64,000 bases of DNA from Haliotis rubra. Its lineage: Eukaryota. The stretch covers positions 310,001 to 374,000 of the forward strand of contig NW_025767630.1 in the NCBI RefSeq assembly GCF_003918875.1, given 5' to 3'. Below, in pieces: positions 39,782 through 61,186 of this stretch. Below the pieces are notes generated by a model that was not told the DNA's origin, made no database searches, and worked only from the letters and a program-made list of their open reading frames with translations. The translations under genes were made by a program, and so were the position numbers. The number at the start of each line of letters is the position of its first letter. The first letter of the stretch is position 1.

Positions 39782-40527
39782 GTCTCACCATGAAGACGCG
39801 TTACTCTGGATATGCACATGAGTGTTACTAAACAACATAATATCTGAGATTTGTTTCTCACCATCAATATTTCAGAGTGAACCACGGGGTGTTTGACCTG
39901 TGATCACCTCATGGCGCTTTTAAATATCATCATGGAAGTCGTGAACAACAATAAAAATAAGATTAGCTATGAATTTGGAAATATCACCACAGACCGAGAC
40001 ACATAAAGCTCAATAATTCTGTATAGAGATATATGAACGTTAAATATTTAATTACACCGTATTTCAACAATTGTTTTATCCCATTTCATCCAACAATTTG
40101 CTTTTTTTACTGCTTGGATGAGATGTATAACGCGAATTTGTCGCGCGATTAACCCGTGTGTGCATTAATACAATTGTTCTGTATTGACAAAGCGTAGGCC
40201 ACACAAAGAAATCTATTGTTTCCTTCTTATGATAGTTTTATCACAATATAAATGCTTGACTCGTAAGTTTGCAAATGGCAAATATTTTGCATCCATTATA
40301 TGAAATATGAACTGTTGTTAGTTTTTCTTTTGATTTATGAGATTTGTTTTAATAACATAACGTATTTGTGAACTGTGTGTTATGTCAAGCATCATCAACC
40401 TGCATGATGAGCGAGCTCATCGATGACAAGGAAACAGTGCAATGTTCAGTATCAATGATTACTGAGTGGACTCGTCGCGGCTGATCACTCTGATGTCATT
40501 GCTTGTCCAAACACTGATCTCGCGTCA

Positions 40528-40574
40528 TCATGGCACTCCAGTTCACTCTAAGATGCCAAGCCAACATTTAAATA
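40528..40574 (+). promoter_or_regulatory. Conserved proximal promoter of the LIM-HD genes (TCATGRCA-N5-GTTCACTC plus TATA-like box)
   Basis: GTTCACTC at 40541, 44963, 49382, 60413 (+) and 38609, 53741, 59170 (-), each 17-19 bp upstream of a TATA-like box and about 105-120 bp upstream of the ATG. Confidence 0.75.
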
Positions 40575-40661
40575 GACTTGATGTGTGCTGGAGTCATCAT
40601 TCCATCTGTCATCAGATCTCCACAACAAGTCCTCCTCCAGATCCTTCTGAGCTATTCCAAA

Positions 40662-41324
40662 ATGTCGGATATGTCATATGACTATCTATCCTCCGACTTG
40701 GAAGAATCGGCAGACTTCATCGCTCTCAGTTTCAACGTGGCTGACCCCTTGTGTTTCACGTGCTGTGACGTCATCACCGACCAGTACTATCTACGTGCTG
40801 GGGATCACGTGTGGCACGAGCACTGTCTGCGTTGCTGTGTGTGTCAGGTGACGCTCGGTGGACATTCTACTTGCTTCGTCAGAGACGGAAACATATTCTG
40901 TCAGAGAGACTTCGCCCAGGTTTATAAGACCAAATGTAGTTCCTGTTTACGACCCATCGAGTCTGGAGATTGGGTGAGATCGGCTGGTGAGAACATGTAC
41001 CACCTTGCATGTTTTTCGTGCAGCACGTGCCAAAGACAATTGTCCACAGGAGAAGACTTCGCCATACACGACGGACGAGTACTTTGCAGAGTCCACGCCC
41101 TCAACCCCGACGACGAGAACGTTAACTGCAGATCAAAATCCAAGAGATTCCGAACAGTCTTCAACGAGGACCAGGTAGCAGTTTTACAGAAGTACTTCGA
41201 CCTTGACACTAACCCAGCCGGAAGTGACCTCGGGATGATCGCCGAAGAAGCGGGTCTTCCCAGACGAGTGGCCCAAGTGTGGTTCCAAAATGCACGTGCT
41301 AAGCTCAAGAGGGCCATGCATTGA
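40662..41324 (+). CDS. Intronless LIM-homeobox gene, copy 2 (Awh/Lhx6/8-like), 220 aa
   Basis: ATG at 40662 (MSDMSYDY...) matches the start of the paralogs; the track start at 40578 is TTG. LIM-LIM-HD intact; AATAAA at 41578-41583. Confidence 0.95.
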   Translation: MSDMSYDYLSSDLEESADFIALSFNVADPLCFTCCDVITDQYYLRAGDHVWHEHCLRCCVCQVTLGGHSTCFVRDGNIFCQRDFAQVYKTKCSSCLRPIESGDWVRSAGENMYHLACFSCSTCQRQLSTGEDFAIHDGRVLCRVHALNPDDENVNCRSKSKRFRTVFNEDQVAVLQKYFDLDTNPAGSDLGMIAEEAGLPRRVAQVWFQNARAKLKRAMH

Positions 41325-42389
41325 ACATGACAACGTTTTGTATTGACAACTCTGGAACTTATTGTATTGTAGATAATTATGTATTTATAAATTGTCCTTG
41401 TTGTTGATATCGTCAACTAATCACTGCAGCTCGAAGTGCTCTATCTCAGCTAAGGCACTTAATTGTGTATATACTTTATTTATTTTACCACTTGTTATTA
41501 TTTATGCCATCAGTGACTGTTCTGTACCTAGCCAATATTTAACATGTAATTTATTTTATGTCCATACTTTGACCATTAATAAAGGATTCGACGCACATTT
41601 TATTTTGTTGTGTAAACAAGTGTAATGTAAAAGGTGCATAATAATATTTTGTTTACACTAGTGCTTCTCGAAGGGGAAGAGTGCACTTAATTTCCCTTCA
41701 GCAATATCACGGCGAAGGACACCAGAAATGGGCTTCACACATTGTACCCATGTCGGGAATCGAACCCGGGTCTTCGTCCATGACGTTATATGTTTCTACG
41801 TATACGGACATTACATTGAATGAACGACTTCGGGCTTGACAGCACAGCCAGCCACGTCAACGGGGTAGTCCCGTAAGTTCGACCTTTAGGTCGAGGTAAA
41901 ATTCCTTTGATGTTGAATGTTTTGAAAACGGATTAAGACACTGGTTTTCTACAAAATGTGAAATGTGTCCACTAAGGCAGCGAAATATGACATTTGTACC
42001 AGCTGGATGACATGTGAACCAGCGGCTTAAGTGAGTGAGTTTAGTTCTCTCAATTCATTAGTAGTAAGTTATTCAATTTCTTACATAAACTTGCATGCTA
42101 TAAGAATGTTGGAACTGACAGTTTTCATCATCATTTCCACAACTTCAGTTATGGCAAATGCACAATTGGTTATATCCTAGTTCTCGTGGTGGAAGATATA
42201 AATAAATGGTTATATTTATATGCATCGTGGAGATGCATTCAGAAAGACTGCATATCAGTCTCAACAGTGAACGACATAATTTCCCAAATACCTGGAGACC
42301 ACAACCACAGACCTGTACACAACGAAGTCAAGGTGAATCTTTTCGACTGTACCATTTCATCAATTCATGCAATAACAGAAACTTAATAC

Positions 42390-42665
42390 ATTGGTCTATA
42401 TAATTATCTAAATTAAAAGTTGATGGTTATACTCTCGGAACCATGAGATAGTAGCAATTCTTCTAAATCGTTTATAAAAATTGAAAACAGTAGCGGTGAC
42501 AAGTTTTCTCCTTGTCTTACTCCAGAGTGACTGAAGAATTAGTCCGAGTAGGATTTACTAATGTTAACACATGATTTGATATTATTATACATGTTCTGTA
42601 TGAGTAACATGTAGAAATTTTCCATTTATATTACACCTGAACATTTTTTGCCATAGCCCAATTAT
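42390..42665 (-). mobile_element. Decayed LINE RT fragment inside the duplicated unit (second copy ~46817-47092)
   Basis: Minus-strand translation LWQKMFRCNINGKF.../NMYNNIKSCV...GVRQGENLSPLLFSIFINDLE with stops and frameshifts. Confidence 0.75.
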
Positions 42666-45083
42666 CAAAAATACTGACGGTCCCCGCACAAACAACAACC
42701 TCGGGGGTTGGCATTGCCGTCTCACGAAGGTTGTGGGGATAACATCCCAACCTTTTCTCGAGTTGCCCAAGTTCTTGGCAGATGAAAAGTACTGAACGAG
42801 ACAAAGATGCTTCAGTACAATGCTGGCCNNNNNNNNNNNNNNNNNNNNNNNNNNNNNNNNNNNNNNNNNNNNNNNNNNNNNNNNNNNNNNNNNNNNNNNN
42901 NNNNNNNNNNNNNNNNNNNNNNNNNNNNNNNNNNNNNNNNNNNNNNNNNNNNNNNNNNNNNNNNNNGGAACGACTAGATATCTCGAAGTTCAGGTGTGCA
43001 AATAACGACCTGACATTGACGGAGTACCTGGAAAATGTCTCCTATTATTGTGTTAAGTTGTTGAGCTCGTGCTTCTTGGTTCTGGACCGTATATCTGTGT
43101 TGCCTGTATATTTTGCTTTCACCATATATGATTTGTGCTATTTAATTTAATTCATAAGGAAATGGTCATTTGTAGTGCTATTGTATGTTGTGTTATTTAA
43201 AGTTGCGTATTTTGGTGCTATAAACTTTTTTATGTATATATTATGTTATATGAATTTGTATTATATATTATGTAGACAATAGTAATTACCGTCACATTGA
43301 ATGTTTAATTAAAAATGATATTTTACAGCGTGAATCTTGTCCACTTATTTAGCGGTGAACATATTAACATTAACCCTACAGTTGTAAAAACATTGACTGC
43401 CAATTGTCTAGAACCAGTGGACCTTAAAGATACACCCCTGCAACCCGACCAGTTTGTTTTTACACCCATGCAAAGGTCGGACTGACGGGACCTTACCACG
43501 TTAACGCCGTCACATACAATCTCGCGGGGCTTTGATTGACTCAACCAATAGTCAATCATTGGTTGATGGAGGCATGAGATGTATTTACGTGTCGTGCTTA
43601 CGGTTACAGCCACCTAACTGAGTGAACGACTTCGGGCGTGACGCCTTGCTAGCCGGGTTGACACGCACCGTCACGTGCAATCTAACGCTTTGATTGACTC
43701 CTTCACGGTCAATCATTGATTGATAGGGGCATGGGTTGTGTCTACGTGTCGCAAATACAGTTAAGGTCGAACTGCTCGATATGTCAATGCTGTACCCCGA
43801 GCCCATCACCGTTCATTCACTGAAACAGACACGCAGAAGAATTCCATTCTAAATATTGCATACAATTAATAAAATCTTCACTATACAACTAAGACCAATC
43901 GGATAGCGATTTAAGAGAGACTATATTTTGTACTGTATGGTACACATCTATATACGTTTACGAAAGGCATTGCGTATGTGGTCCAACATACTTAAGATGC
44001 TTACAGCAACACAAATGGTCAAATCTGGGGTTGATAATCATAAACCTCGACATTGTAAAAATAAATAACAAATTCATCAGACTTTCCCTCATTCCAATTA
44101 AAATTGAGTTTGCAGCAAAACATTTACTTCATTTTCTAACACATCTTTGTATTTAAACAGAACAAAAGATGAGATGGTGCGTTATATGTGGCCAAGGGTC
44201 TCACCATTATGCAAAACATGTTATAATTACTCTGCAAATACACGTGATTATATGTATATTAGCATAAAATCTGCCGATTTGTTCCTGACCTTCAGCATTA
44301 GATTTCCGCGTGAACCGTGGGATGTTTAACCTATGATCAACTGATGGCCCTTTCAGATATGAGCATGTAAGTTGTCTACAACAATAAACATGTTAAAAAC
44401 ATATTTGGAACATTTTTTCGGACTGAAAATATGAAGACAGACCAGGACATACTAAGCTCAGGAATTCTATATAGCGGTATAGAAACGTTGGATATGTACT
44501 AACATCGTATTCAAATATTTGGTTTATCCCATTCCATCCAACAATTTTATTTACTTGACAGTTTGGATGAGACTTTAATTTGTAGCGCGCTAAACCCGTG
44601 TGTGCAATAATACAATGGTTCTGCACTGACAAAACATACTCCAAACACTAGACATCAATTGTTTCCTTGTAGTATATTTTTATCGTAATATAAGTATACA
44701 TGCTATGTATTTCAGTTGGCAAATGGCAAACATTTTGTATCTATAAAATATTGTATGAAATATGAACAACTGTTTCTTTTGATCCGTGAGATTTGTTTTG
44801 ATAACATAATATATTTGTGAACTGTGTGTTATGTCAAGCATCCAATGACAAGGAAACAATGCATCGATCAGTCTCAATGATTAATGGGTGAGCTCATCGC
44901 GGCAGATAACTCTGATGTCGTTGCTTGTCCAAACACTGATCTCGCGTCATCATGGCACTCCAGTTCACTCTAAGATGCCAAGCCAACATTTAAATAGACT
45001 TGATGTGTGCTGGAGTCGTCATTCCATCTGTCATCAGATCTCCACAACAAGTCCTCCTCCAGATCCTTCTGAGCTATTCCAAA

Positions 45084-45746
45084 ATGTCGGACATGTCATA
45101 TGACTATCTATCCTCCGACTTGGAAGAATCGGCAGACTTCATCGCTCTCAGTTTCAACGTGGCTGACCCCTTGTGTTTCACGTGCTGTGACGTCATCACC
45201 GACCAGTACTATCTACGTGCTGGGGATCACGTGTGGCACGAGCACTGTCTGCGTTGCTGTGTGTGTCAGGTGACGCTTAGTGGACATTCTACTTGCTTCG
45301 TCAGAGACGGAAATATATTCTGTCAGAGAGACTTCGCTCAAGTTTATAAGACCAAATGTAGTTCCTGTTTAAGACCCATCGAGTCTGGAGATTGGGTGAG
45401 ATCGGCCGGTGAGAACATGTACCACCTTGCATGTTTCTCGTGCAGCACGTGCCAAAAACAGTTGTCCACAGGAGAAGACTTCGCCATCCACGACGGCCGA
45501 GTACTTTGCCGAGTCCACGCCCTCAACCTCGATGAAGAGAACGTCAACTGCAGACAAAAATCCAAGAGATTCCGAACAGCCTTCAACGAGGACCAGGTAG
45601 CAGTTTTACAGAAGTACTTCGACCTTGACACCAACCCTACCGGAAGTGACCTCGGGAGGATCGCCGAAGAAGCGGGTCTTCCCAGACGAGTGGCCCAAGT
45701 ATGGTTCCAAAATGCACGTGCTAAGCTCAAGAGGGCCATGCATTGA
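45084..45746 (+). CDS. Intronless LIM-homeobox gene, copy 3, 220 aa
   Basis: Near-identical to copy 2, 4422 bp downstream; intact LIM-LIM-HD; AATAAA at 46005-46010. Confidence 0.93.
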   Translation: MSDMSYDYLSSDLEESADFIALSFNVADPLCFTCCDVITDQYYLRAGDHVWHEHCLRCCVCQVTLSGHSTCFVRDGNIFCQRDFAQVYKTKCSSCLRPIESGDWVRSAGENMYHLACFSCSTCQKQLSTGEDFAIHDGRVLCRVHALNLDEENVNCRQKSKRFRTAFNEDQVAVLQKYFDLDTNPTGSDLGRIAEEAGLPRRVAQVWFQNARAKLKRAMH

Positions 45747-48700
45747 ACATTACAACGTATTGTATTGAACCATCTGGAACTTACTAGTATTGTATTGTAG
45801 ATAATTATGTATTTATATATTGTCCTTCTTGTTGATAATCGCCAACTAACCACTGCAGCTTCAAGTGCTCTATCTCAGCTAAGGCATTTAATTATATATA
45901 TTATATTCCTTTTACCACTTGTTATTATTTATGTCATCAGTGACTATTTTGTACATAGTCAATGTGTAACGTGTAATTTATTTGATGTCCATTCTTTGAC
46001 CATTAATAAAGGATTCGACGCACATTTTATTTTGTTGTGTAAACAAGTGTAATGTAAAAGGTGCATAATAATATTTTGTTTACACTAGTGCTTCTCGCAG
46101 GGGGAAGAGTGCACTTAATTTCCCTTCAGCAATATCACGGCGAAGGACACCAGGGTGGGCTTCACACATTGTACCCATGTCGGGGATCGAACCCGGGTCT
46201 TCGTCCATGACGTTATATGTTTCTACGTATACGGACATTACATTGAATGAACGACTTCGGGCGTGACAGCACAGCCAGCCACGTCAACGGGGTAGTCCCG
46301 TAAGTTCGACCTTAAGGTCGAGGTAAAATTCCTTTGATGTTGAATGTTTTGAAAACGGATTAAGACACTGGTTTTCTACAAAATGTGAAATGTGTCCACT
46401 AAGGCAGCGAAATATGACATTTGTACCAGCTGGATGACATGTGAACCAGCGGCTTAAGTGAGTGAGTTTAGTTCTCTCAATTCATTAGTAGTAAGTTATT
46501 CAATTTCTTACATAAACTTGCATGCTATAAGAATGTTGGAACTGACAGTTTTCATCATCATTTCCACAACTTCAGTTATGGCAAATGCACAATTGGTTAT
46601 ATCCTAGTTCTCGTGGTGGAAGATATAAATAAATGGTTATATTTATATGCATCGTGGAGATGCATTCAGAAAGACTGCATATCAGTCTCAACAGTGAACG
46701 ACATAATTTCCCAAATACCTGGAGACCACAACCACAGACCTGTACACAACGAAGTCAAGGTGAATCTTTTCGACTGTACCATTTCATCAATTCATGCAAT
46801 AACAGAAACTTAATACATTGGTCTATATAATTATCTAAATTAAAAGTTGATGGTTATACTCTCGGAACCATGAGATAGTAGCAATTCTTCTAAATCGTTT
46901 ATAAAAATTGAAAACAGTAGCGGTGACAAGTTTTCTCCTTGTCTTACTCCAGAGTGACTGAAGAATTAGTCCGAGTAGGATTTACTAATGTTAACACATG
47001 ATTTGATATTATTATACATGTTCTGTATGAGTAACATGTAGAAATTTTCCATTTATATTACACCTGAACATTTTTTGCCATAGCCCAATTATCAAAAATA
47101 CTGACGGTCCCCGCACAAACAACAACCTCGGGAGTTGGCATTGCCGTCTCACGAAGGTTGTGGGAAAATAACATCCCAACCTTTTCTCGAGTTGCCCAAG
47201 TTCTTGGCAGATGAAAAAGTACTGAACGAGACAAAGATGCTTCAGTACAATGCTGGCCNNNNNNNNNNNNNNNNNNNNNNNNNNNNNNNNNNNNNNNNNN
47301 NNNNNNNNNNNNNNNNNNNNNNNNNNNNNNNNNNNNNNNNNNNNNNNNNNNNNNNNNNNNNNNNNNNNNNNNNNNNNNNNNNNNNNNNNGGAACGACTAG
47401 ATATCTCGAAGTTCAGGTGTGCAAATAACGACCTGACATTGACGGAGTACCTGGAAAATGTCTCCTATTATTGTGTTAAGTTGTTGAGCTCGTGCTTCTT
47501 GGTTCTGGACCGTATATCTGTGTTGCCTGTATATTTTGCTTTCACCATATATGATTTGTGCTATTTAATTTAATTCATAAGGAAATGGTCATTTGTAGTG
47601 CTACTGTATGTTGTGTTATTTAAAGTTGCTTATTTTAGTGCTATAAACTTGTTATGTATATATTATGTAGTATGAATTTGTATTATATATTATGTAGACA
47701 ATAGTAATTACCGTCACATTGAATGTTTAATTAAAAATGATATTTTACAGCGTGAAACTTGTCCACTTATTTTCCGGTGAACATATTAACATTAACCCTA
47801 CAGTTGTAAAAACATTGACTGCCAATTGTCTAGAACCAGTGGACCTTAAAGATACACCCCTGCAACCCGACCAGTTTGTTTTTACACACATGCAAAAGTC
47901 GGACTAACGGGACTTACCACGTTAACGCCGTCACATACAATCTCGCGGGGCTTTGATTGACTCAACCAATAGTCAATCATTGGTTGATGGAGGCATGAGA
48001 TGTATTTACGTGTCGTGCTTACGGTTACAGCCACCTAACTGAGTGAACGACTTCGGCAGTGACGCCTTGTTAGCCGCGTTGACACGCACCGTCACGTGCA
48101 ATCTAACGCTTTGATTGACTCCTTCACGGTCAATCATTGATTGATAGGGGCATGCGTTGTGTCTACGTGTCGCAAATACAGTTAAGGTCAAACTGCTCGA
48201 TATGTCAATGCTGTACCCCGAGCCCATCACCGTTCATTCACTGAAACAGACACGCAGAAGAATTCCATTCTAAATATTGCATACAATTAATAAAATCTTC
48301 ACTATACAACTAAGACCAATCGGATAGCGATTTAAGAGAGACTATATTTTGTACTGTATGGTACACATCTATATACGTTTACGAAAGGCATTGCGTATGT
48401 GGTCCAACTTACTCAAGATGCTTACAGCAACACAAATGGTCAAATCTGGGGTTGATAATCATAAACTCGACATTGTAAAAATAAATAACACAATTCATCA
48501 GACTTTCCCTCATTCCAATTATAATTGAGGTTGCAGCAAAACATTTACTTCATTTTCTAACACATCTTTGTATTTAAACAGAACAAAAGATGAGATGGGG
48601 CGTTATATGTGGCCAAGGGTCTCACCATTATGCAAAACATGTTACTCTGCAAATACACGTGATTATATGTATATTAACATAAAATCTGCCGATTTGTTTC

Positions 48701-49502
48701 TGACCTTCAGTATTAGATTTCCGCGTGAACCGTGGGATGTTTAACCTATGATCAACTGATGGCGCTTTCAGATATGAGCATGTAAGTCGTCTACAACAAT
48801 AAACATGTTCAAAAAATATGTGGAACATTTTTTCGGACTGAAAATATCAAGACAGACCAGGACATACTAAGCTCAGGAATTCTATATAGCGGTATAGAAA
48901 CGTTGGATATTTACTAACATCGTATTCAAATATTTGGTTTATCCCATTCCATCCAACAATTTTATTTACTTGACTGTTTGGATGAGACTTTAATTTGTAG
49001 CGCGCTAAACCCGTGTGTTCAGTAATACAATGGTTCTGCACTGACAAAACATACTCCAAACACTAGACATCATTTGTTTTTTTGTAGTATATTTTTATCG
49101 TAATATAAGTATACATGCTAGGCTCGTATTTTAGTTGGCAAATGGCAAACATTTCGTATCTATAAAATATTGTATGAAATATGAACAACTGTTTCTTTTG
49201 ATCCGTGAGATTTGTTTTGATAACATAATATATTTGTGAACTGTGTGTTATGTCAAGCATCCAATGACAAGGAAACAATGCATCGATCAGTCTCAATGAT
49301 TAATGGGTGAGCTCATCGCGGCAGATAACTCTGATGTCGTTGCTTGTCCAAACACTGATCTCGCGTCATCATGGCACTCCAGTTCACTCTAAGATGCCAA
49401 GCCAACATTTAAATAGACTTGATGTGTGCTGGAGTCGTCATTCCATCTGTCATCAGATCTCCACAACAAGTCCTCCTCCAGATCCTTCTGAGCTATTCCA
49501 AA

Positions 49503-50165
49503 ATGTCGGACATGTCATATGACTATCTATCCTCCGACTTGGAAGAATCGGCAGACTTCATCGCTCTCAGTTTCAACGTGGCTGACCCCTTGTGTTTCAC
49601 GTGCTGTGACGTCATCACTGACCAGTACTATCTACGTGCTGGGGATCACGTGTGGCACGAGCACTGTCTGCGTTGCTGTGTGTGTCAGGTGACGCTCGGT
49701 GGACATTCTACTTGCTTCGTCAGGGACGGAAACATATTCTGTCAGAGAGACTTCGCCCAGGTTTATAAGACCAAATGTAGTTCCTGTTTAAGACCCATCG
49801 AGTCTGGAGATTGGGTGAGATCGGCCGGTGAGAACATGTACCACCTTGCCTGTTTTTCGTGCAGCACGTGCCAAAGACAGTTGTCCACAGGAGAAGACTT
49901 CGCCATCCACGACGGACGAGTACTTTGCAGAGTCCACGTCCTCAACCCCGACGACGAGAACGTTAACTGCAGACAAAAATCCAAGAGATTCCGAACAACC
50001 TTCAACGAGGACCAGGTAGCAGTTTTACAGAAGTACTTCGACCTTGACACCAACCCTACAGGAAGTGACCTCGGAAGGATCGCCGAAGAAGCGGGTCTTC
50101 CCAGAAGAGTGGCCCAAGTGTGGTTCCAAAATGCACGTGCTAAGCTCAAGAGAGCCATGCATTGA
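49503..50165 (+). CDS. Intronless LIM-homeobox gene, copy 4, 220 aa
   Basis: Near-identical to copies 2 and 3, 4419 bp downstream of copy 3; intact domains. Confidence 0.93.
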   Translation: MSDMSYDYLSSDLEESADFIALSFNVADPLCFTCCDVITDQYYLRAGDHVWHEHCLRCCVCQVTLGGHSTCFVRDGNIFCQRDFAQVYKTKCSSCLRPIESGDWVRSAGENMYHLACFSCSTCQRQLSTGEDFAIHDGRVLCRVHVLNPDDENVNCRQKSKRFRTTFNEDQVAVLQKYFDLDTNPTGSDLGRIAEEAGLPRRVAQVWFQNARAKLKRAMH

Positions 50166-52971
50166 ACATGACAACGTTTTGTATTGAACCATCTGGAACT
50201 TATTGTATTGTAGATAATTATATTTTTATAAATTGCTTTTGTTGTTGATATCGTCAACAAACCACTGCAGCTCGAAGTGCTTTATCTCAGCTAAGGCATT
50301 TAATTGTGTATATGTATACTTTATTTATTGTACCACTTGTTATTATTTATGCCATCAGTGACTATTTTGTACATAGCCAATATTTAACGTGTAATTTATT
50401 TTATGTCCATACTTTGACGCACAGTTATTTCAAATATTTGTTTTTGGTAGTAGTTAACGTTGAAATAACAGTTCATTGAGTGCCCCAACTGAAATGTAAG
50501 ACCCAAATATAACGAGAGGAATCTACTCTATCTCTTAAGGCGGTGCTAGGAGATATAACGGGAGTGAAGGAAAACTTGCTTTCTGTATTTTATGGAATAA
50601 ATGATTTTTGTGACAAAATTCCCAAGAGGATGCTGAATTTTATGTAGTAATAATATGAATAACATGGCCACTGAACTCCCCGCCACATGGATATGCCCTA
50701 AGCACACACAACTAAAATGTTAAACAACTAAATTGTCGACAATTAAGAAACAAATGGGTCTTCAGGCAGAAGAAAGGACGAGCCACTAAAGGCCGTATAA
50801 ACGCGTTTTGTACATATCAGGGACCCTTGTCACAAAGACATTTTGAAGGCACGATATCACACCACACTTCTCTAAAAATAAATAATGCATTTCTCTCAAT
50901 AATATTAACTATCAGCCCTCAGGGAAGTTACCATATAATTTATTAAGTGAGTGAGTTCAGTTTTACGCCATTTCAGCTATATGGCGGCGGTCTGTAAATA
51001 ATCGAGTCTGGACCAGACAATCCAGTGATCAACAGCATGAGCATCGATCTGCGAAACTGGGAACCGATGACATGTGTCAACCAAGTTAGCGAGCCTGACC
51101 ACCTGATCCCGTTAGTCACCTCTTACGACAAGCATGGGTTACTGAAGATCAATATTCTAACCCTGTATAATAAATAAATACATACATGCATGCATACGTG
51201 TTGAATGATANNNNNNNNNNNNNNNNNNNNNNNNNNNNNNNNNNNNNNNNNNNNNNNNNNNNNNNNNNNNNNNNNNNNNNNNNNNNNNNNNNNNNNNNNN
51301 NNNNNNNNNNNNNNNNNNNNNNNNNNNNNNNNNNNNNNNNNNNNNNNNNNNNNNNNNNNNNNNNNNNNNNNNNNNNNNNNNNNNNNNNNNNNNNNNNNNN
51401 NNNNNNNNNNNNNNNNNNNNNNNNNNNNNNNNNNNTGTGGTCATCTTAATACTTGGATCGCTTTGTGGATCTGATCCCAGACATACAGCCGATGCACGAT
51501 AAAACAAAATTCTAATTGCTTTACATTTCGTTCAAATAACAACAGAACAAAAAAAAATATTAAATGCTACAATACTATCAAGCATGTAGATGCATTTCAT
51601 TTACAAATGGTAGTCAGCTTAAATTCTGTGCTTTTCACACATTGTTTGCTGATGTACAAATATAAAATGCTTAAGCTATTATAATACATGTAATGAGAGT
51701 AAAAAGAATACCTTCCAAGCTCTTGTTTGATCTATGAACTGACTAGTAAATGTATGTACGTTTTATATGAGCATGTGTGACATAATGTATTTGAACATCT
51801 GGAAAATAAAAGGTAACCCCACCCCCACCCCCCACACACACACCCCAAAAAATAAAAAATACAAAAATTACAAAAATCCCGAAACAACAGAACTTCCAGC
51901 GACTTTTAGGACTTAGTTACATGGGGAGTTACACATGATTCCGGATAACAAGGGTATCAACACGAAGATGAAGCGAACGCTCAAGAAATCGTCTTCTGCC
52001 CCATTTTCATGTGTCCCCACCTTTTTGCATCATTGTAAACGTCACTGATGTAAATATTAAATGGTGTTAGGACCCCGTGGTCAAATATGGCCTTTTCTTT
52101 CACAGCAGTTCATGCAGAAATTTGGGAAATTTGATTTTAACCTGATATTATTATTATCATTTTTTTATTTATACTTTTCTATTATTTCTTTTCCTCGTGT
52201 AGTTTAAAATAATATTTTCTTTACTGAGAAAGTGTAACTCCGAACATAGCAGGTTACATGAGACCACTTTCTGAAAAACACTGTATTGATTGATTCCATC
52301 CAGTTTCTGTCCCTGCAGTGGTGTTATGTGACTCGATGTTTCAGGACTTTTATTGTAAATTATAGCAGCTGTATTATGGTGAAGATGTACAAAGATGTTT
52401 CTGTCCAGCTATGAATGAATACCTGTGGAAAAAAAAAGATTTTAACCTGATCAGATTCGATTGATAAAGTTGAATTTGACAATGTTGAATTTGATAATGT
52501 TGAATTTGATAATGTTGAATTGTGTCTTGTAACCCTTCACATAAAAGTGGACGACTGCGATGCATGCATGGGGAGGAGACATCTACTGCTTGAGTACACT
52601 GCGTGCATATACATATCATATGATTGCCCTCGTGGTCAAGTGGATATTGTGTTTGTTCGTAGAGCAGAAAGGTAGCGGTTCGAACTCTGGTCTCGTCAGA
52701 ACAAAAGCTATTGAAAGATAATCTTATACAACATGATAAAATGTGCATTGAATAATTTATTAACAGTTTAATATATACACACGAAATATACCACAATCAA
52801 ACATTGGCTATGTACAATGTAGTCACTGATGGCATGAATAATAAGGGGGCACAATAAATAATAACATTCATCCCTATTCATGAAGAGCACTTCAGACTGT
52901 ACCGGTTGTTTTATATCAGCAGTAAGTCATGTCACATAATTATTACTGCCTGAATGTGTGAAATATCACAT

Positions 52972-53634
52972 TCACTGCATGGCTCTCTTGAGCTTAGCTC
53001 GGGCATTCTGGAACCACACTTGGGCCACTCTTCTGGGAAGACCCGCTTCTTCGGCGATCCTCCCGAGGTCACTTCCTGTAGGGTTGGTGTCAAGGTCGAA
53101 GTACTTCTGTAAAACAGCTACCTGGTCCTCGTTGAAGGCTGTTCGGAATCGCTTGGACTTTGGTCTGCAGTTGACGTTCTCGTCGTCGGGGTTGAGGACG
53201 TGAACGCGGCAAAGGACTCGACCGTCGTGGATGGCGAAGTCTTCTCCTGTGGACAACTGTCTCTTGCACATGCTGCACGAGAAACATGCAAGGTGGTACA
53301 TGTTCTCACCGGCCGATCTCACCCAATCTCCGGACTCGATGGGTCTTAAACAGGAACTACACCTTGTCTTATAAACGTAGGCGAAGTCTCTCTGACAGAA
53401 TATGTTTCCGTCTCTGACGAAGCAAGTAGAATGTCCACCGAGCGTCACCTGACACACACAGCAACGCAGACAGTGTTCGTGCCACACGTGATCCCCAGCA
53501 CGTAGATAGTACTGGTCAGTGATGACGTCACAGCACGTGAAACACAAGGGGTCAGCCACGTTGAAACTGAGAGCGATGAAGTCTGCCGATTCTTCCAAGT
53601 CGGAGGAGAGGAGTTCATATGACATATCCGACAT
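52972..53634 (-). CDS. Intronless LIM-homeobox gene, copy 5, 220 aa
   Basis: Intact LIM-LIM-HD ORF; TATAAAT on minus strand at 53717-53723. Confidence 0.95.
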   Translation of the reverse strand: MSDMSYELLSSDLEESADFIALSFNVADPLCFTCCDVITDQYYLRAGDHVWHEHCLRCCVCQVTLGGHSTCFVRDGNIFCQRDFAYVYKTRCSSCLRPIESGDWVRSAGENMYHLACFSCSMCKRQLSTGEDFAIHDGRVLCRVHVLNPDDENVNCRPKSKRFRTAFNEDQVAVLQKYFDLDTNPTGSDLGRIAEEAGLPRRVAQVWFQNARAKLKRAMQ

Positions 53635-55439
53635 TTTTAGGGTGCAAAGGAGGTCTTACTGATGCCTTGATGAAGACGATGGAGAATGGAATGACGACAG
53701 CGGCGAACAAGAAGTGATTTATATGTTGGTTTGACAACTTGAGTGAACAAGCGTGTCATGATGATAAGTGTTTTAACACGTCATGGCGACCTATCGATTA
53801 GCTGATTGGCGATCTGATCGATGCATTGTGATTGGCAACGTGATTGCATCTCACAACTGAGCAGATGATGTTAAACCTTAATTGGTAATGATTAATGATT
53901 TAAATTTAATGCTATTTATGTCCCGTGTCAGCCTGTTACTTTGTGCCGTTTTTGTAATTAATTAGTTTAAGGATCCCCCAACAGTGAAAGTAAAGAAAAT
54001 AGAAATAATATAAAAAAAACTGAGAGTTTCTTTTTATTGTCGCCTACTCTGCAAAACCCATTAATTCAGAGTAATGATCAGAGTAGTCTCCAGCAGCATT
54101 ATTGTAATTTCACATGACGAGGCCAAGACTGACTGAATAATATAATGAGAAAGTGTAATCCCAAATATAACATGTGTTACGTACATGATCTTGTTCACCT
54201 TATAACAAACACAAAGGATTTGTTTATATCTGTCGACCATTGTTGAGAAGTTAAGGTGAAAAATGTGGCGTTTGTATAATGCATATTCATACACTTTGAT
54301 CATATTTACAAGTGTACCTTTTGATGCGTATCATAAGTTGAATGACCAAAACCTGTCGATGTTGTTGACAAAGCGAGGAATGTCTGATACTATTTTTTTA
54401 TTTTCCATTTTGAAAAGATAACCAAATATACCACCGCTCCTCTCCACAACTTCTCATGACAAAGTCATTTTTTTACCGTTAAAGATGTTACTGTGGAAAC
54501 GTGGATTGTGTGTGACCACAAGAAGGAACTACATTATTTATTGAGAAGCAAAGACGAAAATTATCTGTCTTTAAATTATTTGGAATTCCAAAATTATCAT
54601 TATGAATAGTTTAATTATCCAGCTGTTTTTATTATTGAATTTAAAACATCAATTAGCCCGCTTATTTTCTTTTCAGTTCTATCATGTTGAGGAAAGTTCA
54701 GGTTGAATATGAAATGATGAATTGAAAGGGAACTCCCCAAAAATAGAATATTTGCAACAACCTGCAAACAATAGATATTTTCAAAGATTTATGGAATGTG
54801 GGCATAAGATTTTTTACGTGGCCTTGTGTAAACATAAATCTACTGTTGGAATGTCCGTGTTACGTTATGCCAGAAATATTCTGTTGCCGCACTATCAAAA
54901 TATGACAATATTGTTAGAATCACAAACATATGGCTTTTTCAGGTTCTCAACAATGTAGTCACGTTTATCTAAACAAACAAAGACATAAAAACACCATGAA
55001 TTCTCTATGATTTCTTGTTGGAGATTTATCAGAGCTCTTCCGGTGAAGTCTGTGTCACGCCCGAGACAAACATCATCGAGGCGTAAAAGTAACGTTTAGC
55101 GTGACTTAACTAGTTGTCAAGTATACTAGTATTTCCGGACGGAGGGGTCAATCTTCGTGGGGTCAGCGGCTTGATTGCCTGGGCAGTAACGTTCACTTAG
55201 TTGTAAAAACATATTGACTGATTGACCGGTGTGAAATAATTAAGAAAACAAGTTCATAACGGCACTGCTCATCACAGATTAATCACTGCACTGACCAGCA
55301 CTGACCACGGACCGGTCACAGTGTGACACGATACTCGTCATGTGTCAGCACATCCAAGCTGACAAAGTCCCGAGTATAAAGGTAACAGAATCAGGTCTAC
55401 AGGCACTTCTCCCCTCACCTTCTCCTGGAAATCTACGCA

Positions 55440-56105
55440 ATGTCGGACACATCATATGACCTCATGTCCTCCGACTTGGAAGAATCAGCAGACGTCATCG
55501 CTCTCAGTTTCAACATGGCTGACCCCTTGTGTTTCACTTGCTGTGACGTCATCACCGACCAGTTCTATCTACGTGCGGGGGATCACGTGTATCACGAACA
55601 CTGTCTGCGTTGCTGTGTGTGTCAGGTGACGCTTGGTGGACATTCTACTTGCTTCGTCAGAGACGGGGACATATTCTGTCAGAGAGACTTCGCCTACGTT
55701 TATAAGACAAGGTGTAGTTCCTGTTTAAGACCCATCGAGTCTGGAGATTGGGTGAGATCGGCCGGTGAGAACATGTACCACCTTGCATGTTTCTCGTGCA
55801 GCATGTGCAAGAGACAATTGTCCACAGGAGAAGACTTCGCCATCCACGACGGTCGGGTACTTTGCCGAGTCCACGCCCTCAACCCCGACGAAGAGAACGT
55901 TAACTGCAGACACAATTCCAAGCGATGCCGAACAGCCTTCAACAAGGACCAGGTAGCAGTTTTACAGAGGTACTTCGACCTTGACACCAAACCTACCGGA
56001 AGTGATCTCGGGAGGATTGCCGAAGAAGCGGGCCTTCCAAGACGAGTGGCCCAAGTGTGGTTCCAAAATTCACGTGCTAAACTCAAGAAGAGAGCCATGC
56101 AGTGA
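55440..56105 (+). CDS. Intronless LIM-homeobox gene, copy 6, 221 aa
   Basis: Intact ORF with private changes (HVYH, KRCRT, DTKP, WFQNSRAK); TATAAA at 55375-55380. Confidence 0.93.
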   Translation: MSDTSYDLMSSDLEESADVIALSFNMADPLCFTCCDVITDQFYLRAGDHVYHEHCLRCCVCQVTLGGHSTCFVRDGDIFCQRDFAYVYKTRCSSCLRPIESGDWVRSAGENMYHLACFSCSMCKRQLSTGEDFAIHDGRVLCRVHALNPDEENVNCRHNSKRCRTAFNKDQVAVLQRYFDLDTKPTGSDLGRIAEEAGLPRRVAQVWFQNSRAKLKKRAMQ

Positions 56106-58398: not shown

Positions 58399-59076
58399 TC
58401 AGTGCATGGCTCTCTTGAGCTTAGCTCGGGCATTCTGGAACCATACTTGGGCCACTCTTCTGGGAAGACCCGCTTCTTCGGCGATCATCCCGAGGTCACT
58501 TCCTGTAGGGTTGGTGTCAAGGTCGAAGCACTTCTGTAAAACAGCTACCTGGTCCTCGTTGAAGGCTGTTCGGAATCTCTTGGACTTTGGTCTGCAGTTG
58601 AAGTTCTCGTCGTCGGGGTTGAGGACGTGAACGCGGCAAAGTACTCGACCGTCGTGGATGGCGAAGTCTTCTCCTGTGGACAACTGTCTTTGGCACGTGC
58701 TGCATGAGAAACATGCAAGGTGGTACATGTTCTCACCGGCCGATCTCACCCAATCTCCAGACTCGATCGGCCTTAAACAGGAACTACATTTGGTCTTATA
58801 AACCTGGGCGAAGTCTCTCTGACAGAATATGTTTCCGTTCCTGACGAAGCAAGTAGAATGTCCACCGAGCGTCACCTGACACACACAGCAACGCAGACAG
58901 TGCTCGTGCCACACGTGATCCCCAGCACGTAGATAGAACTGGTCAGTGATGACGTCACAGCACGTGAAACACAAGGGGTCAGCCATGTTGAAACTGAGAG
59001 CGATGAAGTCTGCTGACTCCTCCAAGTCAGAGGAAAGATAGTCATATGATATGTCCGACATTTTGGAGGAACCCAT
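58399..59076 (-). CDS. Intronless LIM-homeobox gene, copy 7 (225 aa from first ATG; paralog-equivalent ATG at 59061 gives 220 aa)
   Basis: Intact LIM-LIM-HD ORF; TATAAA on minus strand at 59145-59150. Confidence 0.94.
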   Translation of the reverse strand: MGSSKMSDISYDYLSSDLEESADFIALSFNMADPLCFTCCDVITDQFYLRAGDHVWHEHCLRCCVCQVTLGGHSTCFVRNGNIFCQRDFAQVYKTKCSSCLRPIESGDWVRSAGENMYHLACFSCSTCQRQLSTGEDFAIHDGRVLCRVHVLNPDDENFNCRPKSKRFRTAFNEDQVAVLQKCFDLDTNPTGSDLGMIAEEAGLPRRVAQVWFQNARAKLKRAMH

Positions 59077-59399
59077 GGTGAACTATAGCAATACACCTAT
59101 GTTTTCAGGAGGAGAAACGTACAACTCGGAGCACACTTACACCATTTATAGGTTGAAGTTGGCACATTAGAGTGAACGACAGTGTCATGACACTGACTGT
59201 TGTGACACGCACAGTGGTCACCGATCGTCGTAATCAGTTGATGTCCAATCAAGGATTAATCACCCAGTCGTGTGACCATATCTCATAGTAACATTAAAAA
59301 AACACCCAATCATTAGGCCCCCTCGCACGGGTCATCTCAGTACGATAACAGCTTTATTATACGCTGATTGCTATGAATACACAAGGCGTTCAATAAAAA

Positions 59400-59725
59400 C
59401 ATGATGTGTTTGATGCAAAAATATATCCTAGTCTTTTATATAGCGCAGAAATGTGGAGAATAAATACATTTGGAAAATTAGAAAAGGTAAATCTGTATGC
59501 TTGTAAAAGGTTTTTGGGTGTTAAACAAAACACTCCAAATATCATGATCTGTGGAGAATGCGACAGGTTTCCTTTATATATACATGTATATGCTCATATT
59601 TGAAAGTAATCCGGTATTGCATAAAGGTATTACACACGCCAACATATCGCTTACCAAAGAAATGCTATAATATGATGCTTTTATTTGATGGAAATGTGGA
59701 TAAAAACTGGGTTACTGATGTAACA
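59400..59725 (+). mobile_element. Fragment of a related RTE-X-like LINE ORF2 (post-RT region)
   Basis: FDAKIYPSLLYSAEMW...CKRFLGVKQNTPNIMICGECDRFP...RLPKKCYNMM parallels 2080-2400. Confidence 0.75.
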
Positions 59726-60523
59726 AATGTTATATTTGGGATTGCACTTTCTTAGTAAATTACAGATTCTAGTACGTTTCTTAGGTTGAGCCCCATCCGG
59801 GATTCGAACCCACACCCTCAATTATAGCATAAAAACACACAAAAGATGACCCTTTTTTCCAAGTATGAAACTATGGATATATAGAAAATGATTTTTGGGT
59901 CGGGTGTCGGGCTGAATACAAATGATGGGTTTCTGCACTATATTGCAGATGCTCTTATATCACTGTAGTTAATTTGTAATACAGTGAACGATCAACGTTT
60001 CTCATATGCAACAATCGGGTCTTCTTTTAAGTAAAATGTACATCTAAGTGTATCAGATTCACATATTGTGCGTCTAAATGTATGATGTTGTATTTTATAT
60101 ATTAAATCGAACTTTATCGTTGCTGATCCGAATATATGATACGACTAATCAGGTCAAAATATCTATATTCAGATACATGTAATACTTTCACAGAAAAAAT
60201 ATTCCTAAAAATAAAAATGTCATATTTTTCTGATGCGGCTGACTGAAGCTTCGCCGTCTTGAAATTTAAACTGGTTAATTAGGTGATCAAGTGATCAGTT
60301 AATCATTACAGAAAACACCTGATTACTAATCAATCAGCAATTGCTGCTGTGACACGCGCTGGTGACGTCACAGCGTGTCATAACGGTCTTCACTCCTCGT
60401 CATGGCATATGCGTTCACTCGGAACTGCCACCGATGCATATATTAACTGCTGTGCACAACATTTTCAGCATCACTTATCACGTTATCTTCATCTTGCTCT
60501 ATTTCCCCCGGTGCTTCTTCACA

Positions 60524-61186
60524 ATGTCGGACATGTCATATGATCTCCTCTCCTCCGACTTGGAAGAGTCAGTAGACTTCATCGCTCTCAGTTTCAACAT
60601 GGCTAACCCCTTGTGTTTCTCTTGCTGTGACGTCATCACTGACCAGTACTATCTACGTGCTGGGGATCGCGTGTGGCACGAGCACTGTCTGCGTTGCTGT
60701 GTGTGTCAGGTGACGCTTGATGGACATTCTACTTGCTTCGTCAGAGACGGGAACATATTCTGCCAGAGAGACTTCGCCTACGTTTACCAGACAAAGTGTA
60801 GTTCCTGTTTACGACCCATCGAGTCTGGAGATTGGGTGAGATCGGCCGGTGAGAACATGTACCACCTTGCATGTTTCTCGTGCAGCATGTGCAAGAGACA
60901 GTTGTCCACAGGAGAAGACTTTGCCATCCACGACGGTCGAGTACTTTGCCGCGTTCACGTCCTCAACCCCGACGACGAGAGCTTCAACTGCAGACCAAAG
61001 TCCAAGCGATTCCGAACAGCCTTCAACGAGGACCAGGTAGCTGTTTTACAGAGGTACTTCGACCATCACACTAATCCTACCGGAAGTGACCTCGGAAGGA
61101 TCGCCGAAGAAGCGGGTCTTCCCAGAAGAGTGGCCCAAGTATGGTTCCAGAATGCCCGAGCTAAGCTCAAGAGAGCCATGCAATGA
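60524..61186 (+). CDS. Intronless LIM-homeobox gene, copy 8, 220 aa
   Basis: ATG at 60524 (MSDMSYDLL...); the track start at 60362 is GTG and lies upstream of the TATA-like box at 60439. Domains intact. Confidence 0.94.
   Translation: MSDMSYDLLSSDLEESVDFIALSFNMANPLCFSCCDVITDQYYLRAGDRVWHEHCLRCCVCQVTLDGHSTCFVRDGNIFCQRDFAYVYQTKCSSCLRPIESGDWVRSAGENMYHLACFSCSMCKRQLSTGEDFAIHDGRVLCRVHVLNPDDESFNCRPKSKRFRTAFNEDQVAVLQRYFDHHTNPTGSDLGRIAEEAGLPRRVAQVWFQNARAKLKRAMQ

What the first reader, a model, noticed from the sequence alone, without database searches (positions are those of the whole stretch)
40662..61186. Patchwork identity confined to the coding sequence suggests gene conversion
Seen: copies 2-8 are nearly identical at nucleotide level, including third positions, but similarity among copies 2, 5, 6, 7 and 8 collapses close to the ATG and stop codon. 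Variants are shared in incompatible patterns: FAYVY and CSMCKRQ in 5/6/8; QFYL in 6/7; GMIAE in 2/7; HAL in 2/3/6; FNC in 7/8; the silent CAGAATGCCCGA in 5/7/8; YQTK in 1/8. Inference: old duplicates are being homogenised by conversion, as in histone-type arrays, which is unusual for a homeobox gene.
Basis: partly seen in the sequence, partly recalled or inferred. Interest (0 to 1): 0.72.

Follow-up and report, generated by a model that had tools for sequence, protein, structure and literature searches.

The report
Abalone LIM-homeobox cluster homogenised by conversion
Eight intronless LIM-homeobox genes in an abalone genome sit at chromosomal positions older than the abalone species compared, yet their coding sequences keep exchanging short patches, so copies within one species resemble each other more than their true counterparts in other species: a clean but not unprecedented case of concerted evolution.

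Summary
The window, from a Haliotis genome, carries eight intact, intronless Awh/Lhx6/8-like genes (two LIM domains plus a homeodomain, 220-223 aa).

Copies 2-8 are 90-97% identical in the coding sequence (dS 0.11-0.33). That is similar rather than "nearly identical". Between non-tandem copies, similarity drops to shuffled-control level within 50 nt of the ATG and the stop. All eight listed variant patterns are real. 54% of informative site pairs are incompatible (PHI p=0.002-0.008).

The decisive test used the orthologous clusters of H. asinina, H. rufescens and H. cracherodii:
- Flanks group by position, with P5, P6 and P8 at 98-100% support.
- Coding sequences group by lineage. All 15 Californian paralogs form one clade (99/98), and AU tests reject positional orthology (p 3e-4 to 6e-60).
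- Within-genome paralog dS (0.14-0.35) is below positional-ortholog dS (0.37-0.61).

Gene order and orientation are conserved, which points to non-crossover interlocus conversion, not histone-style unit turnover. Copy 1 takes part only in its LIM region.

Assembly gaps are all intergenic. Public read contigs were too short to verify individual mosaic junctions.

Conversion among homeobox paralogs is already known (TPRX1/2, annelid Dlx), so this is a new member of a known kind.

The parts
37830..38501 (-). c1 (position P1): 223-aa intronless Awh-like LIM-HD gene. Only its central LIM region (about alignment columns 200-400) shares in the conversion pool. The N-terminus and homeodomain have diverged.
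   Evidence: dS to c2-8 is about 0.7 overall. Third-position divergence to same-genome paralogs is 0.11-0.16 in the LIM region and 0.4-0.65 outside it. Six lineage-diagnostic sites covary.
40662..41324 (+). c2 (position P2a): 220-aa gene, first unit of the tandem sub-array. Flanks are orthologous to the H. asinina gene asi2.
45084..45746 (+). c3 (position P2): 220-aa gene in a chimeric tandem unit. Upstream resembles c4/asi3 and downstream resembles c2/asi2, as expected from an unequal crossover.
49503..50165 (+). c4 (position P2b): 220-aa gene. Flanks are orthologous to asi3.
52972..53634 (-). c5 (position P5): 220-aa gene. Flanks are orthologous to asi4, ruf3 and cra3.
   Evidence: P5 flank clade 98/97
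55440..56105 (+). c6 (position P6): 221-aa gene. It resembles c5/c8 in the 5' and central CDS and c2-4 near the 3' end. Flanks are orthologous to asi5, ruf4 and cra4.
   Evidence: c6-c8 tract, columns 297-380, global p=0.046; P6 flank clade 100/100
58399..59061 (-). c7 (position P7): 220-aa gene. It resembles c2-4 over much of the 5' and central CDS and c5/c8 at the 3' end. Flanks are orthologous to asi6 and ruf7.
60524..61186 (+). c8 (position P8): 220-aa gene. Flanks are orthologous to asi7, ruf8 and cra9.
   Evidence: P8 flank clade 100/100
40423..50421 (+). Tandem sub-array of about 4.42 kb units holding c2, c3 and c4. Intergenic parts are 96-100% identical. Two assembly gaps sit at homologous places in successive units.
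53718..53748 (-). Example of the promoter island retained by the copies (GTTCAC at about -114, TATA-like box at about -89 of c5). Equivalent sites: 40541-40574 (c2), 44963-44996 (c3), 49382-49415 (c4), 59145-59177 (c7), 60413-60443 (c8). c6 has only a TATAAA at 55375-55380.
   Evidence: These are conserved as motifs while the spacers differ, and they group by position, not by species.
42829..42966 (.). Assembly gap, intergenic (c2 to c3). The others are at 47259-47389 (c3 to c4) and 51211-51435 (c4 to c5).

Best explanation
The eight genes form a lineage-specific cluster of single-exon genes derived from Arrowhead/Lhx6/8. The cluster has six chromosomal positions: P1, P2, P5, P6, P7 and P8. 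These positions were in place before the four compared Haliotis lineages split.

Since then, the coding sequences of P2-P8, and the LIM-domain part of P1, have evolved in concert. Short non-crossover interlocus gene conversions move patches between copies lying in either orientation, 1.5-20 kb apart. The resolvable tracts are about 20-230 nt.

Shown here:
- The positions are ancient.
- The flanks evolve independently.
- Coding sequences, synonymous sites included, are more alike within a genome than between positional orthologs.
- Each copy is a mosaic.

Inferred:
- The tract limits coincide with the CDS because only the CDS is held similar enough by purifying selection on the protein (dN/dS 0.1-0.25). 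That similarity supports homology-dependent strand invasion.
- The flanks have drifted, and gained repeats, beyond the identity that conversion needs. The boundary is therefore self-reinforcing.
- It is not tied to translation as such: in the Californian lineage the homogenised tract runs about 40 nt into the 5'UTR.
- The founder gene was probably a retrocopy of the intron-containing Awh gene.

Separately, unequal crossing-over has amplified single positions: P2 to three copies here and two in H. asinina, and P7 to three to four copies in the Californian species.
For: 1. Positions are conserved. The order and orientation pattern 1(-) 2(+) 5(-) 6(+) 7(-) 8(+) recurs in all four genomes. The best flank matches are always the same position in another species. 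The -240..-1 tree gives P5 98/97, P6 100/100, P8 100/100 and P2 89/92, each with the species tree nested inside.
2. The CDS tree groups by lineage. All 15 H. rufescens and H. cracherodii paralogs of P2-P8 form one clade (99/98). asi5 pairs with asi7 (97/99). win5, win6 and win8 group together (84/92). Forcing positional clades costs 110-240 lnL units, with AU p from 3e-4 to 6e-60.
3. dS of paralogs at different positions within a genome is 0.233 (window), 0.353, 0.144 and 0.202. dS of positional orthologs is 0.37-0.61. Between species, same-position dS is about equal to different-position dS (0.449 vs 0.490; 0.374 vs 0.399).
4. Synonymous sites are not constrained. Ortholog third-position divergence is at least as high as flank divergence.
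5. Lineage-fixed differences are shared by all paralogs: 8 for window vs Californian, 12 for asinina vs Californian. Lineage-specific amino acids are shared across positions.
6. The mosaic signal is significant. PHI p=0.002-0.008 (window), 0.016 (rufescens), <0.0005 (cracherodii and all 28 genes). Permutation-tested tracts: window c6-c8 p=0.046; asinina p=0.002, 0.005 and 0.018.
7. P1 is an internal control. It is homogenised only at about columns 200-400 and saturated elsewhere.
8. Recent tandem copies, and ruf-cra orthologs at P5, P6 and P8, have third positions two to four times more diverged than their flanks. That is expected if patches are imported from other paralogs (cra6-cra7 p=3e-5; win3-win4 p=0.016).
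9. The whole genome holds only these eight copies. The canonical Awh gene has introns.
Against: - Individual tracts in the window are only marginally resolved (best global p=0.046).
- PHI is not significant in H. asinina (p=0.66).
- The window assembly has gaps, and 1.3 kb of 100% identical sequence surrounds two of them. Part of the fine mosaic, or some singletons, could be polishing errors.
- Public read contigs break inside the paralogous CDS and could not bridge any junction. At some c7 sites only the paralog-majority letter was seen. The tool states that contigs drop rare variants, so this decides nothing either way.
- GC3 (0.59-0.63) is the same in converted and unconverted parts of c1, so there is no clear signature of GC-biased conversion.
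- No conversion event has been observed directly.
- The reason the boundary sits at the CDS is inferred, not shown.
Confidence: 0.88

Rival explanations
1. There is no conversion. The copies are fairly young duplicates of a short unit (promoter stub plus CDS). Purifying selection keeps the coding sequence alike, and the flanks were never homologous or decay faster.
For: dN/dS of 0.1-0.25 shows strong protein-level constraint. Flank homology between paralogs reaches only about 130-290 nt.
Against: - The same positions, with orthologous flanks, exist in four species, so the duplications predate their split.
- Paralog dS is nevertheless lower than ortholog dS.
- Third positions diverge as fast as flanks between orthologs, so synonymous constraint cannot explain the similarity.
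- 54% of informative site pairs are incompatible.
Confidence: 0.02
2. Birth-and-death turnover: each lineage repeatedly lost and re-duplicated genes by unequal crossing-over. Paralogs then look species-specific because they really are young.
For: - Copy number differs (8, 7, 8, 9), with lineage-specific tandem amplification of P2 or P7.
- c3 is a chimeric unit of the kind unequal crossover produces.
- The Californian P7 array has a promoter unlike that of win7/asi6/ruf7.
Against: - Turnover moves flanks along with genes. Here unique flanks, spacing pattern and alternating orientation are conserved at P2, P5, P6 and P8 in all four genomes, while only the CDS is lineage-specific.
- Crossovers between inverted copies would invert segments and swap promoters. 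No such swap is seen.
- It explains the tandem sub-arrays but not the homogenisation across positions.
Confidence: 0.05
3. The fine-scale patchwork in this window is partly an assembly or polishing artefact. Short reads from one paralog would have been used to correct another in a gapped hybrid assembly.
For: - Five N gaps lie in the window.
- 100% identity over about 1.3 kb surrounds the two homologous gaps.
- Several c7-specific letters (for example at 58529 and 58937) were not seen in any laid contig.
Against: - Three independent assemblies of other species show the same lineage-wise clustering, incompatibilities and tracts.
- Flank/CDS junctions of c6, c7 and c8 are reproduced in contigs from two individuals.
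- Logan contigs drop minority variants by design, so missing letters are uninformative.
- An artefact could change some sites but cannot create the cross-species pattern.
Confidence: 0.1
4. RNA-mediated conversion: reverse-transcribed mRNA recombines with paralogous loci. This would explain both the lack of introns and the restriction to transcribed sequence.
For: - The genes are intronless while canonical Awh has introns.
- Homogenisation excludes promoters.
- In the Californian lineage about 40 nt of 5'UTR is homogenised.
Against: - In the window, the putative 5'UTR (TATA at about -90, so roughly 60 nt of leader) and the first 50 nt after the stop are at shuffled-control similarity. A cDNA donor would carry them.
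- Tracts are short and internal.
- P1 is converted only in its middle.
- With no introns, nothing distinguishes RNA from DNA donors.
Confidence: 0.04

Closest known systems
TPRX1/TPRX2 and LEUTX arrays (eutherian ETCHbox homeobox genes; PMC8208926)
   Same: - Lineage-specific homeobox duplicates defined by position rather than sequence.
- Repeated interlocus conversion makes conspecific paralogs pair in trees.
- Conversion is limited to part of the gene, and tandem arrays are also affected.
- The same tests were used (gene-tree conflict, GENECONV).
   Different: - Those are PRD-class genes with introns, in mammals, and mostly one pair flanking CRX.
- Here it is a LIM-class, single-exon, six-position cluster in a gastropod.
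- The whole CDS is homogenised and one member (P1) has partly escaped.
Capitella teleta Dlxa/Dlxb, and hexapod engrailed/invected as cited there (PMC3199776)
   Same: Closely linked, inverted homeobox paralogs in a spiralian, with a conversion tract over the most conserved part of the gene.
   Different: That case is two genes with a tract of about 150 bp around the homeobox. It has no multi-species test of position against sequence.
Duplicated Amylase genes of the Drosophila melanogaster subgroup and Hsp70 pairs: 'concerted evolution only in the coding region' (recalled from the literature, not checked here; Hsp70 and amylase are listed as examples in PMC3199776)
   Same: Inverted or nearby duplicates whose coding regions are homogenised while the flanks diverge independently. 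This is the same inferred mechanism of homology-limited conversion.
   Different: Those are enzyme or chaperone genes, usually two to five copies. Dosage of an abundant product is the usual rationale. Here the product is a transcription factor of unknown expression.
Histone, rDNA and D4Z4/DUX macrosatellite arrays
   Same: Within-species similarity of repeated genes exceeds between-species similarity.
   Different: Those arrays are head-to-tail units homogenised as wholes, spacers included, largely by unequal exchange. Here the spacers are unique, orientation alternates and position is conserved. Only c2-c4 resemble that mode.

Membership tests
Concerted evolution by interlocus gene conversion | The duplication predates the speciation events compared (positional orthology shown independently of the converted sequence) | tested here: met
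   The same order and orientation occur in four genomes. Flank best hits are position-specific. The flank tree has P5, P6 and P8 at 98-100% support.
Concerted evolution by interlocus gene conversion | Paralogs within a genome are closer to each other than to their positional orthologs, at synonymous sites too | tested here: met
   CDS tree; AU tests; dS 0.14-0.35 within genomes against 0.37-0.61 between orthologs.
Concerted evolution by interlocus gene conversion | Mosaic structure: phylogenetic conflict along the sequence that is spatially clustered, with tracts of excess identity | tested here: met
   PHI p=0.002-0.008 in the window and <0.0005 for all 28 genes. Tracts are significant after multiple-pair correction in the window (0.046) and in asinina (0.002-0.018). 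PHI is not significant in asinina alone.
Concerted evolution by interlocus gene conversion | Direct observation of non-reciprocal transfer (pedigree, gamete or population data) | not testable with these tools
   Only contigs of low-coverage runs were available.
Histone-type tandem array homogenised as whole units | Uniform head-to-tail units whose spacers are homogenised together with the genes | tested here: not met
   Orientation alternates and spacers of 1.5-3.8 kb are unique. Paralog flanks sit at shuffled-control similarity. Only c2-c4 form such units.
Arrowhead / Lhx6/8 group of LIM-homeodomain proteins | Two N-terminal LIM domains followed by a homeodomain | tested here: met
   Pfam LIM x2 (E 1e-24 to 1e-27) and Homeodomain (E 1e-15 to 1e-16) in all copies tested.
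Arrowhead / Lhx6/8 group of LIM-homeodomain proteins | Closest relatives are Awh/Lhx6/Lhx8 rather than other LIM-HD groups | tested here: met
   Among the 120 listed hits, every one that carries a family name is called Awh, arrowhead, LHX6_8 or Lhx8. Identity to canonical genes is 45-52%. No explicit tree against the other LIM-HD groups was built.
Arrowhead / Lhx6/8 group of LIM-homeodomain proteins | Orthology to the single canonical gene (multi-exon structure, about 280 aa with a C-terminal extension) | tested here: not met
   The canonical gene lies elsewhere (contig C2759) in at least three coding exons. The cluster genes are single-exon, 220-223 aa, and end three residues after the homeodomain. 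They are derived paralogs, not the ortholog.
Retrogene-derived gene family | Intronless copy of an intron-containing parent | tested here: met
Retrogene-derived gene family | Poly(A) remnant and target-site duplications | not tested
   The flanks are too diverged for this to be expected to survive.

The most novel reading that the evidence does not exclude
The cluster is an undescribed, abalone-specific array of LIM-homeodomain genes derived from a retrogene. Its coding sequences behave as one shared pool across six old loci. This would be because selection favours many copies of the same product, for instance in maturing oocytes or cleavage-stage embryos, as with mammalian Obox, Dux and TPRX arrays. 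P1 would then be caught in the act of escape: its homeodomain is free to change DNA specificity while its LIM domains remain tied to the pool. If so, it is a tractable system for asking whether conversion is merely tolerated or is selected.
Probability: 0.25. Interest if true: 0.6.

Novelty: new member of a known kind. Interest (0 to 1): 0.45.

Why it matters
The case is unusually clean. Position, orientation and flanks give an independent record of orthology in four genomes. The erasure of that record inside the coding sequence can therefore be measured rather than guessed. One member (c1) provides an internal control: it has converted and unconverted segments within the same gene.

Practical consequences:
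- Gene trees of this family will mislead any orthology or dating analysis in abalone.
- dN/dS scans on these genes are unsafe.
- Short-read mapping and polishing across these paralogs needs care.

The family itself did not turn up in the literature searched. The only trace was an 'Awh-like' entry among ovary-maturation genes of H. laevigata (bioRxiv 10.1101/2025.08.18.670794). That entry may or may not come from this cluster.

Tried and rejected
- **Public reads.** Eight runs hold part of the stretch, and none is on record as RNA, so expression could not be examined. The laid Logan contigs come from roughly 7x data. They break wherever paralogs share words, so none bridges a mosaic junction. 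Letters that differ from the window inside c7 are traceable to cross-laid paralog contigs; for example, 58804 and 58807 carry c3's states. Result: inconclusive for the artefact question. Only the flanks and CDS ends of c6-c8 are confirmed, in two individuals.
- **GC-biased conversion.** GC3 is 0.59-0.63 in all copies and in both the converted and unconverted parts of c1. Canonical Awh has 0.51. This is not diagnostic.
- **PHI in H. asinina alone.** It is not significant, although tract tests there are.
- **A 69%-identical 202-aa relative (P0004).** It traces to a 1-kb metagenome contig with no context, so it says nothing about how far the family extends outside Haliotis.
- **Synonymous constraint or codon bias as the cause of paralog similarity.** Rejected, because orthologs diverge freely at third positions.
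- **cDNA-mediated conversion.** Considered and set low, because leader and trailer sequences are not homogenised in the window.
- **Not done.** No structure prediction or further protein searches were run. The family assignment was already unambiguous.
Full report
**What is there**

The window is G000:C2740:310001-374000 of a 1.38-Gb Haliotis assembly. Its nearest named relatives are H. asinina, H. rufescens and H. cracherodii.

Between 37.8 and 61.2 kb lie eight complete single-exon ORFs of 220-223 aa:
- c1 37830-38501(-)
- c2 40662-41324(+)
- c3 45084-45746(+)
- c4 49503-50165(+)
- c5 52972-53634(-)
- c6 55440-56105(+)
- c7 58399-59061(-)
- c8 60524-61186(+)

Each has two LIM domains and a homeodomain and ends three residues after the latter. 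Among the 120 best database relatives listed, every one that carries a family name is called Awh, arrowhead, Lhx6/8 or Lhx8, and identity to canonical genes is 45-52%.

The genome holds only these eight copies. The canonical Awh gene lies on another contig in at least three coding exons. The cluster is therefore a derived, intronless offshoot, most simply founded by a retrocopy (inference).

**Gaps**

The three N runs inside the finding (42829-42966, 47259-47389, 51211-51435) are all intergenic, at least 1 kb from any coding sequence. ORFs that appear to cross them are artefacts of translating N.

The first two gaps sit at homologous points of successive 4.42-kb tandem units. About 1.3 kb around them is 100% identical between units. 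Continuity there, and even the exact copy number of c2-c4, cannot be vouched for. None of the coding-sequence comparisons depends on this.

**Checking the observation**

- Copies 2-8 are 90.3-96.8% identical, with dS 0.11-0.33 and dN/dS 0.08-0.26. They are similar and under purifying selection, but not "nearly identical at third positions".
- c1 is an outlier, with dS about 0.7.
- Between copies at different positions, repeat arms run 650-695 nt, which is the CDS.
- The matched fraction falls from 0.85-0.95 in the CDS to shuffled-control level in the 50 nt on either side.
- One upstream island (-200..-101) keeps motif-level similarity: GTTCAC, then a TATA-like box about 25 nt further on, around -90.
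- Of 51 informative sites among c2-8, 54-55% of pairs fail the four-gamete test, and compatible sites cluster along the gene (PHI p=0.0075; p=0.002).
- A GENECONV-style permutation test resolves one tract after correction for all pairs: c6-c8, columns 297-380, p=0.046.

**The decisive comparison**

I fetched the orthologous clusters of H. rufescens (8 genes), H. cracherodii (9) and H. asinina (7). I merged the overlapping loci without conflicts.

All 32 genes are intact. All four clusters share the pattern 1(-) 2(+) 5(-) 6(+) 7(-) 8(+). Lineage-specific tandem amplification affects P2 in the window and asinina, and P7 in the Californian species.

*Flanks follow position.*
- For both the upstream and downstream 1.2 kb, the best match of nearly every gene outside the tandem sub-arrays is the same position in another species.
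- A tree of -240..-1 recovers P5 (98/97), P6 (100/100), P8 (100/100) and P2 (89/92).
- The species tree ((window, asinina), (rufescens, cracherodii)) is nested inside each of these clades.

*Coding sequences follow lineage.*
- All 15 Californian P2-P8 genes form one clade (99/98).
- asinina P6 and P8 pair with each other (97/99).
- Window c5, c6 and c8 group together.
- Forcing any position to be a clade costs 110-240 log-likelihood units, with AU p from 3e-4 to 6e-60. The groups were defined from flanks before the tree was built.

*dS agrees.*
- Paralogs at different positions within a genome average dS 0.233 (window), 0.353, 0.144 and 0.202.
- Positional orthologs average 0.37-0.61.
- Between distant species, same-position and different-position pairs are nearly equal (0.449 vs 0.490; 0.374 vs 0.399).
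- Between the closely related Californian species the orthology signal survives (0.104 vs 0.177).
- Homogenisation is therefore slower than the ruf-cra split and faster than the deeper splits.

**Excluding the alternatives**

- *Synonymous constraint.* Between orthologs, third positions diverge at least as fast as alignable flanks: P1 and P2 in ruf-cra give 0.046-0.050 vs 0.044-0.046; window-asinina gives 0.17-0.27 vs about 0.15.
- *Independent duplication or birth-and-death turnover.* This would move flanks with the genes, and they have not moved. Crossovers between inverted copies would swap promoters, and none is swapped. Unequal crossing-over does explain the tandem sub-arrays. c3 has the upstream of c4/asi3 and the downstream of c2/asi2, which is the expected product of such an exchange.
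- *cDNA donor.* This would carry leader and trailer sequence, and those are not homogenised in the window.

**Further signatures of conversion**

- Sites fixed in all paralogs of one lineage and fixed differently in all paralogs of another number 8 and 12. Lineage-specific amino acids are likewise shared across positions.
- In recent tandem copies, and in ruf-cra orthologs at P5, P6 and P8, third positions are two to four times more diverged than the surrounding DNA. Examples: cra6-cra7 0.068 vs 0.016, p=3e-5; win3-win4 0.073 vs 0.036, p=0.016. This fits coding sequences importing foreign patches that the flanks cannot receive.
- In the Californian lineage, the homogenised tract extends about 40 nt into the 5'UTR at P2, P5, P7 and P8. 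The boundary is therefore a property of DNA similarity, not of the reading frame.
- c1 acts as an internal control. In about columns 200-400 (end of LIM1 to LIM2), its third positions are 0.11-0.16 from same-genome paralogs and 0.23-0.30 from the other lineage's. Six of the eight lineage-diagnostic sites between columns 214 and 385 covary with the other copies. In its N-terminus and homeodomain, divergence is 0.4-0.65 and is the same within and between lineages.

**Mechanism**

Shown:
- The positions are old.
- The flanks are independent.
- Coding sequences, synonymous sites included, are homogenised.
- The copies are mosaics.
- No rearrangement accompanies the exchange.

Inferred:
- Exchange is by non-crossover, homology-dependent repair between linked copies in either orientation.
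- Protein-level selection keeps the CDS within the identity that conversion needs.
- Flanks that have drifted, or been invaded by repeats, have escaped. High-copy elements lie at 56.9-57.3, 57.7-57.9 and 59.7-59.9 kb.
- Together these produce a boundary at the ATG and the stop.

**What remains open**

The window's fine mosaic could not be verified read by read. The available runs are low-coverage contig sets that fragment inside the paralogous CDS, and by design they drop minority variants. A share of the singletons could be polishing errors. Examples are the c7 Tyr-to-Cys change at 58529 and the c1 Asp-to-Val change at a LIM1 zinc-ligand position, which is absent from the three other P1 orthologs.

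The phenomenon does not rest on this assembly, since three independent assemblies show it. Expression is unknown: no RNA run was found. The only literature trace is an 'Awh-like' transcript rising during ovary maturation in H. laevigata, which is a lead and not evidence.

**Comparison with the known, and verdict**

Conversion among homeobox paralogs is documented for TPRX1/TPRX2 and LEUTX arrays and for Capitella Dlx, with engrailed/invected cited there. Concerted evolution restricted to coding regions is classical for Drosophila Amy and Hsp70 duplicates (from memory; both are listed as examples in PMC3199776).

The histone-array analogy fails on spacers, orientation and positional stability.

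This is a new, well-resolved member of a known kind, in a gene family that the searched literature does not describe. Interest is moderate.

Noticed in passing
window 37830-38501 (c1): c1 has Val where all other copies, and the P1 orthologs of three other species, have Asp. The site is the last zinc-ligand position of LIM1 (CQRVF against CQRDF). It is either a species-specific change or a base error in this assembly.
   Followed up: partly
window 41760-43100 and 46190-47520: About 1.3 kb around the two homologous assembly gaps is 100% identical between the c2-to-c3 and c3-to-c4 spacers, while the adjacent coding sequences differ at 3-4%. This could be a very recent exchange or re-use of the same reads by the assembler.
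   Followed up: partly
window 45084-45746 with flanks (c3 unit): c3 is a chimeric tandem unit. Its upstream matches c4 and H. asinina asi3. Its downstream matches c2 and asi2. That is the expected product of an unequal crossover between two older P2 copies.
   Followed up: partly
window 56892-57289, 57688-57886, 59678-59876: Word depth runs from several thousand to over 100,000 in all four laid runs, including two other organisms. These are high-copy interspersed repeats sitting in the spacers between c6, c7 and c8.
   Followed up: no
window 37367-37594, 50970-51153, 62670-62897: Three copies of a roughly 200-nt element, 88-90% alike. Two of them form an inverted pair bracketing the whole cluster, just beyond c1 and c8. 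It is probably a small mobile element.
   Followed up: no
window 32447-33773 and 34900-36300: Two minisatellite blocks lie upstream of the cluster, with periods of 52 nt and 12/36 nt.
   Followed up: no
L014-L018, L021 (H. rufescens and H. cracherodii clusters): In the Californian lineage, the last roughly 40 nt of 5'UTR are shared by P2, P5, P7 and P8. The amplified P7-side tandem copies carry a proximal promoter unlike that of win7/asi6/ruf7 and nearer to P5.
   Followed up: partly
L022 (metagenome contig, 1004 nt): A single-exon 202-aa relative, 69% identical to c5, sits on a short metagenome contig of unknown organism. It may mark the family outside the four species compared.
   Followed up: partly
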